NCBI RefSeq assembly: GCF_001194135.2
Contig: NC_069008.1
Location: forward strand, 4,106,849-4,160,149
Direction of reading: 5' to 3'
DNA from: Octopus bimaculoides
Lineage: Eukaryota
DNA length: 53,301 bases
Shown: positions 40,071 to 52,449 of the stretch, piece after piece
Position numbering within the stretch: position 1 is the first letter of the stretch
How the letters are laid out: each line of letters begins with the position of its first letter
Notes under the pieces: model-generated
The model's database searches: none
Told to the model about the DNA's origin: nothing
Seen by the model: only the letters and a program-made list of their open reading frames with translations
Position numbers and translations under genes: made by a program

Positions 40071-40083
40071 GCCAAAATGGCGG
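40071..40083 (+). promoter_or_regulatory. YY1-type motif overlapping the LysM start codon
   Basis: GCCAAAATGGCGG contains AANATGGCG, with the ATG at 40077. Confidence 0.5.
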
Positions 40084-40247
40084 ACGGTATGAGATCTTCG
40101 GAACGACAGACATTAGGACAGTTCGCCAAATCGCAGACGAAGTACGGAACGGCTAGTATACCCGTGAGATGGAATTCCAATTTCGTAAAACACAAAGTGG
40201 TGTCCACAGATTCTTTGGTTGGCATCGCGCTAAAATATGGAGTATCG
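40077..40247 (+). CDS. LYSMD2: LYSMD1/2-type LysM protein, first coding exon A (N-terminal half of LysM)
   Basis: MADGMRSSERQTLGQFAKSQTKYGTASIPVRWNSNFVKHKVVSTDSLVGIALKYGVS|gtgagt. YGT motif plus H...D(S/T)L.GIALKYGV as recalled for LYSMD1/2. The symbol is family-level only. Confidence 0.85.
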
Positions 40248-41604
40248 GTGAGTGGAATTTTGTTCACCTTTCTTTTCAAAAGAACATCTGGGTTGGTCTT
40301 AGACTCTGGTCGGTGCGACGAGGAAGGAAGCAAGAAAATGAATGAAGAAGCAGAATATAAACGGTATATTGGAATTGTCAGCTTAGACGGAAGCGTGTCT
40401 CGTTCTTTGACAGTTCTATATTTTTGTAGTATCGTTGTTGTTACGACAGCTGTGGGTGGTGAAAAATCGGTAGATGGATGACACAGACTCCAGTTCAAAT
40501 CTCGACCTGACCGATTTCACTTTCGTTATCCCTTTCGGGCGTACGTTGTTCTTATGGCGGTAAGAGATAGTAGAATAAAATTACACCACACCAATGTCTT
40601 TATGTTCCAAGTACAAATCACGTGCGTGATAGAATCCGTAATCGTTCTAAAGTTGATGTTATTTTAAAGACTGCGAGTAGTGGAAATGAGTGTCAAGTGA
40701 TCGGAATCGGCAAAATGTATGCCTCCTTCCCTTTGTGTGTATAATGTGCTAAAATCCCGCCCTAACTCGAATTTGCTTTTCATAATCTTTCTTCGATCGA
40801 TGTTGTTATTGTGTATGGCGGCGGAGGATGTCAAAATAGTTAAAGCAGCCGTTGTTGTTAAAATGTATGTCGTTTACATACATATATCGAGTTCAACTTC
40901 CACTTAGCTATGATTTTTTTTCCTTTCATCCTTCCAGGGCCGATTTAATCGAGTGTCCACCACCCCCACCTCTGCCTAAAGTTTGTGACTTTCCTTTATG
41001 CTAGAAATTAATATTTGTTGTTATTTATTTCGTGGGTTGAACAGCTGGCAAAATGCTTTGAGGTATTTCAGCAAGACCCCGTGCCCGGAACCCTCAAAAG
41101 TTGGTAAATTCATCATATATATATATATACCATGCTCACCCAATAATCGAATCGTAGAATCATAACGGAACAGTAATTTCTGTGTTCCTTGTTACGAAGT
41201 ACGATGGTAGTTGTTTTGAGAAAATCCTTGCATATCCCACAGCTAGTTGTATCACGATGAGGGAGACAGTTGTTTGGCGGAAGCACTGCACGTCCCCCTC
41301 AGCTAGTTGTATTATGATGAGGGTAGCAGTTGATGTGAGAAAGCACTGCATATTCCTCAACTAGTTGTATTACGATAAGAGTAGCAGTCGTTTTGAGAAG
41401 GCACTGCACATGGGCCCGGGGACAGGGGATCAAAGAGGGTGCAAGCGTACCTCTTAAAATTTTTGTTCTGTGCAAAAGCAAAATATACATTCCTACTTTT
41501 GTCAGGTTTAGAAAACAGTGTGTAAAAAGGGATCTGTAAAATACAGATTGATGTTAGGTTTCTTCTCAAAAGACAAAAATAAATTTTAAAAAGCAATAAG
41601 ACCT

Positions 41605-41995
41605 TACTCTTTTTACTCTTTTACTTGTTTCAGTCATTTGACTGTGGCCATGCTGGAGCACCGCCTTTATAGTCGAGCTAATCGACCCCAGGACTTATTC
41701 TTTGTAAGCCTAGTACTTATTCTATCGGTCTCTTTTGCTGAACCGCTATGTCACGGGGATGTAAACACACCAGCATCAGTTGTCAAGCAATGCTGGGGGG
41801 ACAAACACAGACACATATATATATATGTATGACGGGCTTCTTTCATTTTCCGTCCACCAAATCCAGTCACAAGGCTTTGGTCGGCCCTAGGCTATAGTAG
41901 AAGACACTTGCCCAAGGTGTCACGCAGTGGGACTGAACCCGGAACCATGTGGTTGGTAAGCAAGCTACTTACCACACAGCCACTCCTGCGCCTAT
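41605..41995 (-). mobile_element. Full-length SINE family B (best copy)
   Basis: Head aggcgcaggagtggctgtgtgg, core cttgggcaagtg, internal (TA)n, tail repeats (AAAAGAGTA)n. Confidence 0.9.
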
Positions 41996-42365
41996 ACTTT
42001 TACCTTGATTGTATGGCTGGATGCCCTTCCTAACACCAATCACCCAGCAGAGTGGACGGAGTGCTTTTTACTTGGCACACACATCTCTGCTTTTTCCATG
42101 TTGGTCTGAGTTGAATGAGAACTTCATAAAGACATAATCCCATGCATGCATCTAACCATCTTCTTCCCTCACTATTCCTGGGAGGCTTGTGCAGGTAAAA
42201 TCCTCAGGTACCACTTCCATAGGGTCCTGTCAGAAGCAGTTGTCATAACCCATCTCAGCTGGTTTCACAAGCGCGACACTGTAACTATGGATATTATCCA
42301 AACATCTCATTCTTGCATGGTCTGCCCTGAAGGTCTCCTCCCAGTTGGCTCACCTCAAAGAATTT

Positions 42366-42555
42366 AATTCTTTCAGATTTTTGAAGAATCTGATTCTTTT
42401 GGGTTCTTGAAAAATCCGATCCTTTCAATCTCTTGAATAATCTTAATTCCTTCAGATTCTTAAAAAATTTGATTCTTTTGGATTCTTGAATTATGCAATT
42501 TTTGGGGGATTATTGAAGAATTTGATTCTTCCAGATTCTTGAAGAATGTAATTCT
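42366..42555. repeat. Degenerate short-period repeat (gattcttgaagaattt)
   Basis: ttcttgaa / gattctt recur every ~10-22 nt. Confidence 0.7.
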
Positions 42556-43781
42556 TCCCTATGACATTCTAACCACTTGTCTGTATGACTTCTTGGTACA
42601 GAGAAATGGCAGCTTGACCTGGAGACCTTCCCTGATCTCTTAGCCATGTACCCTGTATCCTGAAACCCTTCAAAAGACCCCCATTTCAGCCCCTTCTATT
42701 TACATCGTACCCCTTTTGTCATCAACCCCTACTTGCTTCAATATATAAGGTATTGATTCTTCCCATCTTTTATATGACAACCTGAACAATACCCAGATAT
42801 CTTCTATTCTTTACTTGTTTCAGTCTTTACACTGTGGCCATGCTGGGGCACCGCCTTGAAGAATTTTTATTCAAATATATCAACCCCCAGTGCATATTAT
42901 TAGTTTGTAAAGCCAAATCGCTTAGTTACTGGGATGTAAACATACCAGCACCGGTTGTCAAGTGAGTGGGGGGAACAACACAGGCACAAAAGACACACAC
43001 ACATACATATATACAACAGGTCTCCTTCAGTTTCTGTCTACCAAATCCACTCACAAGGCTTTGGTTGGCCTGAGGCTATTACAGAAAACACTCGCCCAAT
43101 GTTCCACACAGTGGGACTGAACCCAGAACCCTGTGGATGGGAAGCAAGCTTGTTACCACCATTGACACCGCTTGACCTGTGACAGTGGCTTTTCTGTTGA
43201 TTTTTACTTTTTATTTAATGCTTTTTTTGGATTGGATTCGATTGGCTTGCCCATGTTCAGTCCACTGCGTGATGAAGGCCTCAGCGTGCTCTCTTAACAC
43301 CAGAGAATAGCTTGAAATCATACTGGTTTGATAAGCCTACTCTGCCACACTGGCTCAACGGGGCCTGGCAGAGGGGTGCAGTTTTTATACTCATACCTGG
43401 GAGTAGTTAAGTCAATTGCATCCACCCCTTGTACTCAACTGGTGCTTTTTTTTATCGATCGCAATAAGGTGGAAGCCAAGGTCGGCCTCTGCGGAATTTG
43501 AACAGAGAACGCAAAGATGAATGAAATATTGTTGAGTATTTTGCCCAGCATGCTAATGATTCCGCCAGCCTGTCACCTTTTATGCTTTAAGTGGCTAAAT
43601 GATGCCAGGACACTGAGGAAAACGCACACACAAACATAGACATTTGGAAGGAAACAGAAGGAACGATATTTCATATCTCAAGTTGACACCATGTCACCGA
43701 CAGGTTTAAATGAATCCGAATTCTGAATGTAAAGACAGACTAAATACTGCTAAGCATTTCACCCAATGTGTTAACAACAGT

Positions 43782-50768: not shown

Positions 50769-50912
50769 GACATTGTTAATTCCACCCACCATCGCTGCTG
50801 CTGCTGACACTTACGGCAACGACCTTTGCCCCCACCCTCTCGTTTATAGATTAGATAGCATTATCTAAGTAGATCTGAGTGATCTGACAGCTAATTCTGT
50901 CTTTTGTCGAAG

Positions 50913-50982
50913 GCTGAGAACTACTACAACGACTACCCACAAAGGCTGACTCAGAGACACAGACCAACAACAGGCAGTACTG
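50913..50982 (+). CDS. Candidate 70-nt exon (AENYYNDYPQRLTQRHRPTTGST) upstream of LysM exon B
   Basis: Branch-like ctaat, acceptor cttttgtcgaag and donor CTG|gtgaga. Only one frame is open (phase 0 to 1). It could also be a UTR exon. Confidence 0.35.
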
Positions 50983-51469
50983 GTGAGAGAACACAAACCA
51001 CTGACCAATCTCCCCGCCACCCTGCCCCAGTAGACCTCTGTCCACTTGGTCACCTGGTGGGTGCCACTCCTCCCACCTTCTACTTCCTTCGCCCCAGCAA
51101 TCATACATTAGCTGTCATGCTGGTTATGTTATCTTTCTACACAAACAAACGCCTCGTTCTTTAACTGCGAAGCCACGCTAATTGTTAGGAGAATGCTCCA
51201 CACATATTCATTCATACATACATACATACATACGCTCGCCGTGACCTTCATGAAAATCCTTATTTGAACCCCAAATCCAACCAACTGCGTATATAAACCT
51301 TATTATACACGCTGTTAGATTTTAACTGGAGATTCCTTGATCACTAACATCGAAGCTGTTACGTAAGGAAACACAAGTATACGCACAACACATGCACACA
51401 GACAAACATATACAAGCCCGATATTATGTTAATGTACTGGAAATTTTAATCTGTGTAAAAACTGCATAG

Positions 51470-52130
51470 ACCCTCGAAAATCCACCAGAAAATTTTGCCA
51501 GATCTACAAAAGTTCACTGAATTCAAGAAATTTAATGTAATCTACAAAATTTAGCAAGTTTCAATGAAAATGTCTCTAATCCCAGAAATTTAGTTAAATT
51601 CACAATATTTGACCAAATTCACAATATGTGAATCAAATTCACAAATATCTGACAAAAATCTATATAAAATTTAATTAGACTCAGAAAATTGTTAACCAAA
51701 TCCACAAAGATCTTTTGCTAGTTCTTCAAAAATTTGTGAAATCGATTAAAATTTAATCTAATCCACAGAAATTTTGTCAAATTCAAAATCCATAAAATCT
51801 TAAATTCACAATTTACTAAATCGACAAAATTTTAGTCAAATTCCCAGAAATTTCGCCTAATCCTCAAATTTCAGTAAGTTTGCCAAAATTTAACCAAATT
51901 CACAAAATTTAACTAAATCCACCGAAATTTTACCTAATCCACCAAAAATATTATCAAATCTGCAAAAATTTCAATCAAATCCTCAAAAATTTTGCCAAAT
52001 CCACAAAATTCTCAAAAACCTAAATTGACCAAAATTCCTCAAAATTTAAAAAAACAAAGCTGATTTACTCAAAATCTACCAAATTCATCATAAAATCTTA
52101 TTAAATTCTACCAAATTGAGAGAAAAGAAA
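51470..52130. repeat. Degenerate ~10/21-bp-period A-tract repeat (aaatccacaaaattt)
   Basis: Dozens of aaatc/aaattc and aaaattt units spaced about one helical turn apart, judged by eye. Confidence 0.75.
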
Positions 52131-52264
52131 AAACTTGCCTGAATCATCAGGATTCAACCAAATCTTCCAAAGTCTTGCCAACCATATAAACCCACATATA
52201 TACACAAATACATACACCTGAACATACAGGCTAAACATACGTGTACCTCAGAGCAGCCATATTG

Positions 52265-52360
52265 ATGTCGGAGATGAAGGATTTTGGCAGGCATTACTTT
52301 CGCCACCGCCTTCGTGCCCAAGAATCTCTGGTCAGCATTGCATTGAAGTATCAAGTATCG
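52265..52360 (+). CDS. LYSMD2: LysM exon B: second copy of the N-terminal half of the LysM domain
   Basis: MSEMKDFGRHYFRHRLRAQESLVSIALKYQVS|gtgagt. Homologous to exon A with the same phase-0 junction; in-frame TAA upstream at 52232. Missed by the ORF track. Confidence 0.8.
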
Positions 52361-52449
52361 GTGAGTACCAAAGAGTCATGCTGCCAAGAATTATGAATCA
52401 GGGAGCTTAACCAGCTTTACATGCATAGCACCCATAACGCTTCCATGTT

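What the first reader, a model, noticed from the sequence alone, without database searches (positions are those of the whole stretch)
40077..52366. LysM domain split into two alternative N-terminal halves: a possible variable-exon/constant-exon system
Seen: exon A (..HKVVSTDSLVGIALKYGVS) and exon B (..HRLRAQESLVSIALKYQVS) lie 12 kb apart. Each encodes the first strand and helix of a LysM domain and stops at the same residue with an identical 13-nt junction AGTATCG|GTGAGT, phase 0. I found no exon for the second half (MEQIKRAN-like) between them. Established, recalled: in vertebrate LYSMD1/2 the domain continues ..LKYGVT-MEQIKRAN... Inference: exon duplication gave two promoters or first exons that both splice to one downstream exon, producing two hybrid LysM domains with different surfaces (G>Q in the KYG turn; basic HYFRHRLR versus VKHKVV).
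Basis: partly seen in the sequence, partly recalled or inferred. Interest (0 to 1): 0.85.

Follow-up and report, generated by a model that had tools for sequence, protein, structure and literature searches.

The report
Duplicated first exon of a LysM gene
A mollusc-type LYSMD1/2 gene (the counterpart of the fly eye-colour gene red) has two diverged copies of its first coding exon 12 kb apart, each encoding the front half of its LysM domain. They are most likely alternative first exons, a common kind of gene architecture, but the shared downstream exon lies outside the window and no transcript data could be checked.

Summary
Exon A (40077-40247, 57 aa) and exon B (52265-52360, 32 aa) both start at an ATG. 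Both encode strand 1 and helix 1 of a LysM domain and end in phase 0 at the same residue, with the identical 13 nt AGTATCG|GTGAGT.

Exon A is the clear orthologue of exon 1 of animal LYSMD1/2 ('red') genes and sits in a CpG island. A and B share two residues (S46, V48) found in none of 165 other family members, so they are lineage-specific duplicates of each other.

In the helix block, 7 of 10 nucleotide differences are synonymous (simulation p about 0.001), so B was kept by selection. However, B lacks the family's conserved N-terminal motif and any CpG island. It also replaces two near-invariant glycines; one is the residue changed by the fly red[K1] G51S mutation.

A profile of the conserved second half finds nothing anywhere in the window. 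This favours two alternative first exons joined to a common exon beyond 53301 (about 0.5). Splicing, a promoter at B and the scaffold order across three real gaps remain untested.

Rivals are an unused relic exon and tandem genes obscured by the assembly. Interest is modest: a new member of a known kind.

The parts
39800..41000 (+). CpG-rich, promoter-like island around exon A
   Evidence: CpG observed/expected is 1.1-1.8 here against a window mean of 0.58. The only comparable island is at the TFIIA-gamma start, 30600-31800.
40077..40247 (+). Exon A: first coding exon of the LYSMD1/2 ('red') orthologue. It encodes the conserved N-terminal motif plus LysM strand 1 and helix 1 (57 aa).
   Evidence: Sequence. 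tblastn E = 3.6e-15 and 56% identity to the oyster orthologue P0014. Pfam LysM profile positions 1-19. Kozak context caaaATGg.
40248..40253 (+). Splice donor GTGAGT of exon A, phase 0
   Evidence: Sequence. The intron is at the same position in Haliotis, in about 15 unspliced read-through ORFs from other animals that end ..KYG[VA][ST]|V[SR], and by inference in Drosophila red.
40254..52264 (+). Interval between the exons: intron 1 of the A transcript in the favoured model. It is full of repeats and has no LYSMD exon.
   Evidence: HMM and tblastn searches are negative. It holds a SINE-like family D5 with 5 copies, a Mos1/mariner HTH fragment at 46266-46427 on the - strand, and gaps at 44128-44137 (spurious), 46553-47206, 49580-49679 and 50552-50720.
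52265..52360 (+). Exon B: diverged duplicate of the 3' part of exon A. It has its own ATG (a second ATG at 52274 has a better context) and encodes LysM strand 1 and helix 1 (32 aa), without the N-terminal motif.
   Evidence: Sequence. tblastn to A gives E = 1e-3. Shared derived S46 and V48. In the last 12 codons pS = 0.72 and pN = 0.11, simulation p about 0.001. The in-silico chimera passes the Pfam LysM cut-off.
52361..52366 (+). Splice donor GTGAGT of exon B, phase 0, identical to that of exon A
   Evidence: Sequence; repeat pair D17.
52185..52190 (+). TATAAA 75 nt upstream of the ATG of exon B; only a weak candidate core promoter
   Evidence: The motif occurs about once per kb on this strand, and this copy lies in CA/TA-rich low-complexity sequence. 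It is not evidence on its own.

Best explanation
This is one LYSMD1/2-type gene (orthologue of Drosophila red) whose first coding exon was duplicated in tandem within this animal's lineage.

Exon A keeps the ancestral form. It has a CpG-island promoter, the conserved N-terminal motif, and LysM strand 1 with helix 1. Exon B, 12.1 kb downstream inside what is then intron 1, has its own start codon and encodes only a diverged strand 1 with helix 1.

Each exon ends with the same phase-0 donor. Each is inferred to splice to the same exon 2 (LysM helix 2 and strand 2), which lies beyond position 53301. The result would be two proteins with a common body. One is canonical. The other is N-terminally short and more basic, with an altered helix 1 (G49S, G55Q).

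Shown here: the duplication, the conserved intron position, the absence of a second-half exon in the sequenced window, and selection on B's helix.

Inferred: use of B as a first exon, its promoter, and splicing to a shared exon.
For: 1. A is the orthologous exon 1, with tblastn E down to 3.6e-15 against mollusc, annelid, brachiopod and insect LYSMD1/2 proteins.
2. A and B share S46 and V48, each seen in 0 of 165 other family members. B therefore arose from A within this lineage, not from an old paralogue.
3. The phase-0 intron after KYGV[ST] is ancestral.
   - Haliotis has exon 1 at 3001-3201, exon 2 at about 9946-10242 and exon 3 at 17053-17247 of L001.
   - Many read-through ORFs end at the same point.
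   - In Drosophila red, codons 51 and 67 lie 1469 bp apart.
4. No second-half or C-terminal exon is present in any frame of the window. This fits two first exons ahead of shared exons and does not fit two complete tandem genes.
5. In the 12 helix codons, 7 of 10 nucleotide differences are synonymous. Two or fewer amino-acid changes from 10 random substitutions has p about 0.001. The ATG, the open frame and a consensus donor are all intact.
6. No AG acceptor lies in the LysM frame between the upstream stop (52232) and the ATG, so that frame is only usable from B's own start codon.
7. B joined to an orthologous second half scores as a LysM domain: 29.3 bits against a cut-off of 20.9.
8. A transcriptome and genome survey of the squid Euprymna lists one LYSM2-type gene and one LYSM3-type gene (PMC10844198). 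This is weak evidence against a second LYSMD1/2 paralogue, if the window is from a cephalopod.
9. Half a LysM domain cannot fold alone (established beta-alpha-alpha-beta fold), so a selected B must be joined to a second half.
Against: - No transcript, junction or protein evidence exists. None of 304 fetched family proteins has a B-type short N-terminus, and no cephalopod LYSMD protein was retrieved.
- B has no CpG island (observed/expected about 0.5) and only a chance-level TATAAA.
- B replaces G49, which is G in 164 of 165 relatives, with S. That is the same change as the Drosophila loss-of-function allele red[K1] G51S. It also replaces G55 with Q (0 of 165).
- The first 11 aligned codons look unconstrained (pN = 0.60, pS = 0.50).
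- A and B lie on different contigs joined only by scaffolding.
- Known isoforms of mollusc, brachiopod and nemertean orthologues differ at the C-terminus, not the N-terminus. Haliotis intron 1 has no B-like exon.
Confidence: 0.5

Rival explanations
1. Exon B is an unused or recently disabled relic of a partial duplication that covered exon 1 only. It sits in intron 1 and is not made into protein. Alternatively it gives only rare, non-functional transcripts.
For: - There is no promoter signature at B.
- B has substitutions at two near-invariant glycines, including the position mutated in Drosophila red[K1].
- It has lost the conserved N-terminal motif and has a poor Kozak context at its first ATG (sequence).
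- No B-type protein occurs among 304 family proteins.
- A 32-codon frame stays open by chance fairly often.
Against: - The excess of synonymous changes in the helix block (p about 0.001).
- ATG, frame and a perfect GTGAGT donor are retained although synonymous sites are near saturation (pS = 0.72).
- K-to-R changes needed three nucleotide substitutions yet kept the charge (AAA to CGC, twice).
- The block for the selection test was chosen after seeing the data, so that test is only moderately strong.
Confidence: 0.22
2. There are two separate tandem paralogous LYSMD genes. The downstream exons of gene A are hidden in the gaps or were misplaced by the scaffolder, and B is exon 1 of the next gene.
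For: - A and B lie on different contigs joined across four N runs.
- This assembly does mishandle contig ends: the 339-nt exact overlap at the 10-N gap was not merged.
- Shared derived residues are equally expected after a whole-gene duplication.
Against: - Both the second-half exon (297 nt in Haliotis) and the C-terminal exon (195 nt) would have to be missing from 11.2 kb of sequenced interval.
- Only the 654-N gap is large enough. It lies between a mariner fragment and a (TA)n/SINE copy.
- B lacks the N-terminal motif that every family member has.
- Euprymna is reported to have a single LYSM2-type gene.
Confidence: 0.18
3. B acts as a cassette ('poison') exon. It would be spliced between exon A and exon 2 through the weak acceptor at 52251|52252, shifting the frame and down-regulating the gene.
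For: An AG at 52250-52251 follows a short pyrimidine-containing stretch. The resulting 109-nt exon is open in that frame and is not a multiple of three (sequence).
Against: - The pattern of synonymous versus non-synonymous change fits the LysM frame, not the shifted one.
- The polypyrimidine tract is poor.
- This reading would not explain retention of the ATG or of LysM-core residues.
Confidence: 0.04

Closest known systems
Animal LYSMD1/LYSMD2 family, including Drosophila red (CG12207)
   Same: - Exon A has the family's N-terminal motif and invariant H39, then D[ST]L-x-G-IALKY-G-V-[ST].
- It also has the phase-0 intron that splits the LysM domain after helix 1.
- Drosophila red also makes proteins with two different N-termini (PMC5068940).
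   Different: - In Drosophila both N-terminal classes share the same LysM codons: the same genomic mutation is G51S in one class and G74S in the other. Here the alternative exon would replace half of the domain itself.
- No orthologue examined shows a second first-half exon.
Variable first exon / constant exon loci (vertebrate UGT1A, clustered protocadherins)
   Same: There are tandem, same-orientation, homologous 5' coding exons. Each has its own ATG and donor, none needs an acceptor, and no constant exon lies between them.
   Different: - Only two exons are present.
- A promoter is not evident at the second one.
- Splicing to a common exon was not observed.
- The variable part is half of one small domain rather than whole domains. 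(The features of UGT1A and protocadherin loci are from general knowledge.)
Tandemly duplicated, mutually exclusive exons that encode alternative versions of part of a domain (for example Dscam1 exons 4 and 6, each half an Ig domain)
   Same: Exon duplication would give alternative versions of one structural half of a domain, joined to a constant other half (inference).
   Different: Those are internal exons chosen by splicing. Here the choice would be made by transcription start or first-exon use, and B cannot be read in frame after A.
LysM domain of OXR1 / NCOA7 / Drosophila mustard (LysM plus TLDc proteins)
   Same: It has a similar helix 1 motif, DSLNSIALKF (recalled from memory), including Ser where B has Ser.
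   Different: - B has the LYSMD1/2-specific His before strand 1 and the LYSMD1/2 intron position.
- B shares the derived S46 and V48 with exon A.
- No TLDc-type protein appeared among the best profile hits.
- This reading was rejected.

Membership tests
Animal LYSMD1/2 ('red') family | Conserved N-terminal motif E-x2-LG-x-F-x-K-S/Q-x-KYG-[ST]-T ahead of the LysM domain | tested here: met
   Exon A has SERQTLGQFAKSQTKYGTAS. E9, Y23 and G24 are invariant or nearly so in alignment A2. Exon B does not have this motif, because it starts 16 codons before the domain.
Animal LYSMD1/2 ('red') family | LysM first half with H39, D/E45, L47, G49, I-A-L-K-Y and G55 | tested here: met
   Exon A matches every near-invariant column except T46, where it has S. 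Exon B keeps H39, E45, L47 and IALKY but has S at G49 (G in 164/165) and Q at G55 (0/165).
Animal LYSMD1/2 ('red') family | LysM second half [MV]EQIKRxNKLWTNDSLFLRExLLIP, and a C-terminal DFLxKxD and DExFEL region | tested here: not met
   Not present in any frame of the 53.3-kb window. It is expected downstream of 53301, so this is a limit of the window rather than evidence against membership.
Animal LYSMD1/2 ('red') family | Phase-0 intron splitting the LysM domain directly after KYG[VA][ST] | tested here: met
   Both A and B end there with GTGAGT. The position is the same in Haliotis, in read-through ORFs of many animals and by inference in Drosophila. Lottia lacks this intron.
Pfam LysM (PF01476) | Score above the gathering threshold (20.9 bits) over the 43-position profile | tested here: inconclusive
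   Alone, A scores 15.2 bits (positions 1-19) and B gives no hit, as expected for half-domains. As in-silico chimeras with the Haliotis second half, A scores 36.0 bits and B 29.3 bits.
Alternative (variable) first exon system | Two or more homologous 5' coding exons in tandem on the same strand, each with an ATG and a donor | tested here: met
Alternative (variable) first exon system | No constant exon between the variable exons | tested here: met
   The HMM search is negative over all sequenced bases. About 920 unread bases in three real gaps remain.
Alternative (variable) first exon system | A separate promoter or transcription start for each variable exon | tested here: inconclusive
   There is a CpG island at A only. 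The TATAAA at 52185 is at background frequency. No expression data are available.
Alternative (variable) first exon system | All variable exons splice to one common downstream exon | not testable with these tools
   The acceptor exon is outside the window. No eukaryotic genome or transcript collection could be searched by DNA, and the protein collections returned no A-type or B-type spliced product.

The most novel reading that the evidence does not exclude
The octopus-type orthologue of the fly pigment-granule gene red would make two proteins from two promoters. They would differ in the front half of the single LysM domain itself (strand 1 and helix 1, with changes at G49 and G55 beside the ligand groove) and in whether the family's conserved N-terminal motif is present. 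This would be a natural half-domain swap, showing which half of an animal LysM domain, and which partner motif, matters for its still unknown function.
Probability: 0.4. Interest if true: 0.45.

Novelty: new member of a known kind. Interest (0 to 1): 0.3.

Why it matters
The function and ligand of intracellular animal LysM proteins (LYSMD1/2, Drosophila red) are unknown. The only functional clues are two fly missense alleles in the LysM domain.

A naturally selected second version of helix 1 carries the same Gly-to-Ser change as one of those alleles and lacks the conserved N-terminal motif. If it is expressed, it would be a ready-made comparison for structure-function work. It would also be a tidy example of exon duplication creating alternative half-domains.

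If it is not expressed, this is simply a duplicated exon in an intron. In either case gene annotators should not merge A and B into one model.

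Tried and rejected
Searches that led nowhere:
- The search for homologous proteins with exon A alone found nothing, because the word index is too sparse for a 57-aa query. The exhaustive profile search then found the family.
- A family-alignment query and a chimeric query (A plus consensus second half plus B plus consensus second half) retrieved hundreds of LYSMD1/2 proteins. None was a cephalopod protein or a B-type protein.
- I tried to extend the window by looking up four window ORFs in public assemblies. 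None is on record.
- I looked for precedents of N-terminal alternative exons in orthologues. The X1/X2 isoforms of Lingula, Lineus and bivalves differ only at the C-terminus, and Haliotis intron 1 holds no second first-half exon.
- A literature search for LYSMD1 and LYSMD2 exon structure found no paper.

Readings considered and rejected:
- Chance similarity. The joint probability of the alignment and a donor at the same codon is about 3e-7.
- Processed pseudogene. B stops exactly at the intron and keeps the donor.
- Exon fragment captured by a transposon. B and its near flanks are unique in the window.
- OXR1/mustard-type LysM exon. B has the family-specific His, the family intron position and the shared derived residues.
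- An old LYSMD1-versus-LYSMD2 type paralogy, for the same reason.
- A protein containing A followed by B. No in-frame acceptor exists.

Full report
**1. What is in the sequence**

Exon A runs from the ATG at 40077 to 40247 (57 aa) and is followed by GTGAGT. Exon B runs from the ATG at 52265 to 52360 (32 aa) and is followed by GTGAGT. An in-frame TAA lies 31 nt upstream of B's ATG. The 13-mer AGTATCG|GTGAGT is identical at both junctions, and both exons end in phase 0.

- The only tblastn hit of A elsewhere in the window is B (23 aa, 48% identity, E = 1e-3).
- The DNA pair 40208-40253 / 52321-52366 is 76% identical.
- GTGAGT occurs 18 times on this strand, so its presence at the homologous codon boundary makes chance negligible.
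- Pfam places A residues 39-57 on LysM profile positions 1-19 of 43 (E = 0.02). This is strand 1 plus helix 1 of the beta-alpha-alpha-beta fold.

**2. The gaps**

Neither exon touches a gap. A lies on the stretch 38557-44127 and B on 50721-53301, so their linkage depends on scaffolding.

- The 10-N gap at 44128-44137 is an artefact. The 339 nt before it are repeated exactly after it, so the sequence is continuous there and about 349 nt shorter.
- The gaps at 46553-47206, 49580-49679 and 50552-50720 are bounded by (TA)n runs, SINE-like copies and a Mos1-type transposase fragment.

**3. What gene this is**

An exhaustive profile search with the A/B alignment returned the animal LYSMD1/2 family. 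Word-index searches with a family alignment then supplied the names. [quoted passage not shown] In insects the name is 'lysM peptidoglycan-binding domain-containing protein red', the orthologue of Drosophila red (CG12207; PMC5068940).

- Exon A aligns over its full length with exon 1 of these proteins (E down to 3.6e-15; 56% identity to oyster). The alignment includes the conserved N-terminal motif.
- Exon A sits in one of the two clearest CpG islands of the window.
- PDB entry 2DJP (a human protein labelled 'SB145', which I recall as LYSMD1) confirms the recalled human motif.

**4. The intron position is ancestral**

- In Haliotis, exon 1 ends at ..KYTVS. Exon 2 starts with VEQIKREN 6.7 kb downstream, and exon 3 lies a further 6.8 kb on.
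- About 15 library proteins are unspliced read-through ORFs ending ..KYG[VA][ST] followed by V-S or V-R. That is what GTRAGT or GTAAGA gives when read as codons.
- In Drosophila red, codons 51 and 67 are 1469 bp apart.
- Lottia has lost this intron.

**5. No second half in the window**

I built two HMMs from 20 orthologues. One covers the 32 residues of the second LysM half and one covers everything after exon 1. Both were run against all six frames of the window, and only noise was found (best 7.4 bits). tblastn agrees.

For two complete tandem genes, a 297-nt exon and a 195-nt exon (Haliotis sizes) would both have to be hidden. Only the 654-N gap is large enough.

**6. How A and B are related**

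Across 165 family members, position 46 is always T and position 48 is Q, M, A or P. A and B both have S46 and V48. B is therefore a duplicate of A, or the reverse, made within this lineage.

- The duplication is not recent. In the 12 helix codons, 7 of about 9.7 synonymous sites differ (pS = 0.72) against 3 of 26.3 non-synonymous sites (pN = 0.11).
- Ten random substitutions leave two or fewer amino-acid changes with p about 0.001. The block was chosen after inspection, which weakens this test.
- The 11 codons before the helix are not conserved (pN = 0.60), apart from the invariant His and the basic character.
- No flanking similarity survives beyond the 46-nt pair.

**7. Ways in which B is odd**

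- It lacks the N-terminal motif.
- It has no CpG island (observed/expected about 0.5).
- Its TATAAA at 52185 occurs at background frequency.
- Its first ATG has T at position -3.
- It has R at K38 (1% of relatives), L at V41 (2%), S at G49 (G in 164/165) and Q at G55 (0/165).
- G49 corresponds to Drosophila G51, because the invariant LysM Asn is 16 residues downstream in both proteins. G51S is the red[K1] mutation.
- Even so, B joined to the Haliotis second half scores 29.3 bits on Pfam LysM, the same as the native Haliotis domain. Ser at this position is common in bacterial LysM domains among the hits.

**8. How it most likely works**

A selected half-domain has to be joined to a second half. 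The LysM frame of B cannot be entered from exon A, because no AG lies in frame after the upstream stop. The only possible acceptor, at 52251|52252, gives a 109-nt frame-shifting exon. B-containing mRNAs must therefore start translation at B.

The simplest model has two alternative first coding exons with identical donors and one shared exon 2 beyond 53301. A would be driven by a CpG-island promoter and B by an unidentified internal promoter. I give this 0.5.

The rivals are an unused relic (0.22), tandem genes obscured by the assembly (0.18) and a poison cassette exon (0.04).

Euprymna is reported to have one LYSM2-type gene, which fits a single gene. I could not confirm that the window is from a cephalopod. 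The best matches to exon A are bivalves, at 54-58% identity.

**9. Comparison with known systems, and novelty**

Alternative first exons produced by tandem exon duplication are a well-known architecture. So are duplicated exons that encode alternative halves of a domain. Drosophila red itself has two N-termini, but both share the same LysM codons. Mollusc, brachiopod and nemertean isoforms differ at the C-terminus.

If the model is right, this is a new member of a known kind. It has some added value for a protein family whose function is unknown.

**10. Verdict**

- Interest is 0.3.

Noticed in passing
window 43789-44476: The 339 nt before the 10-N gap (43789-44127) are repeated exactly after it (44138-44476). 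This is an unmerged contig overlap, so the gap is spurious and a SINE/TE-like element appears falsely duplicated.
   Followed up: yes
window 12035-21600 (+): A GA-binding-protein-beta-like gene. Its exons include 12035-12142 ([18 protein letters not shown]...), ankyrin-repeat exons at 12988-13185 and 13996-14091 (Pfam Ank, E = 3e-18), and a coiled-coil-like C-terminal exon around 21126-21239. The naming as GABP-beta is from memory.
   Followed up: partly
window 30455-31627 (-): A TFIIA-gamma (GTF2A2-type) gene on the minus strand. The Pfam TFIIA_gamma_N domain is split over two exons (31556-31627 and 30455-30556). A CpG island covers 30600-31800.
   Followed up: partly
window 12035-52360: GABP-beta, TFIIA-gamma and LYSMD1/2 genes lie within 40 kb. 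From memory, human GABPB2 and LYSMD1 are neighbours on 1q21.3, and GABPB1, LYSMD2 and GTF2A2 are all on 15q21-22. This may be an ancient conserved linkage.
   Followed up: no
window 52430-53010: About 580 nt of CT-rich (CTTT/CCTT)n microsatellite begins 70 nt after the donor of exon B. It creates a spurious 214-aa ORF.
   Followed up: partly
window 51478-52049: A degenerate tandem repeat (about 66-68% identity between copies offset by 81-280 nt) lies immediately upstream of exon B.
   Followed up: partly
window 46266-46427 (-) and 33965-34159 (-): Mos1/mariner transposase fragments. The first has a Pfam HTH_48 hit (E = 6e-6). The second looks like a mariner C-terminal end (recognised from memory; it had no Pfam hit). 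A SINE-like family whose translation reads ..FQFPSTKSTHKALV.. is scattered through the window, with 5 copies between A and B.
   Followed up: partly
L002 3381-3830 (Lottia gigantea KB203275.1): The Lottia orthologue is read without interruption across the position where Haliotis, this window and many other animals have the LysM-splitting intron. This suggests intron loss or a retrogene.
   Followed up: partly
proteins P0027, P0159, P0160, P0186, P0190, P0247, P0131 compared with P0014, P0080, P0174: Mollusc LYSMD1/2 genes have two alternative C-termini. The long form ends ..DELFEL and the short form ends ..PDTDC or ..KDTEC. This looks like a conserved 3' alternative splice.
   Followed up: no
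protein P0002 (276 aa, representative library): A vertebrate-like LYSMD2 exon-1 peptide (..YGSTASVTAPLTEKYIEHRVSASDTLQGIALRYGVT) is repeated three times in tandem in one predicted protein. It is either an assembly artefact or a tandem triplication of exon 1 in some other animal.
   Followed up: no
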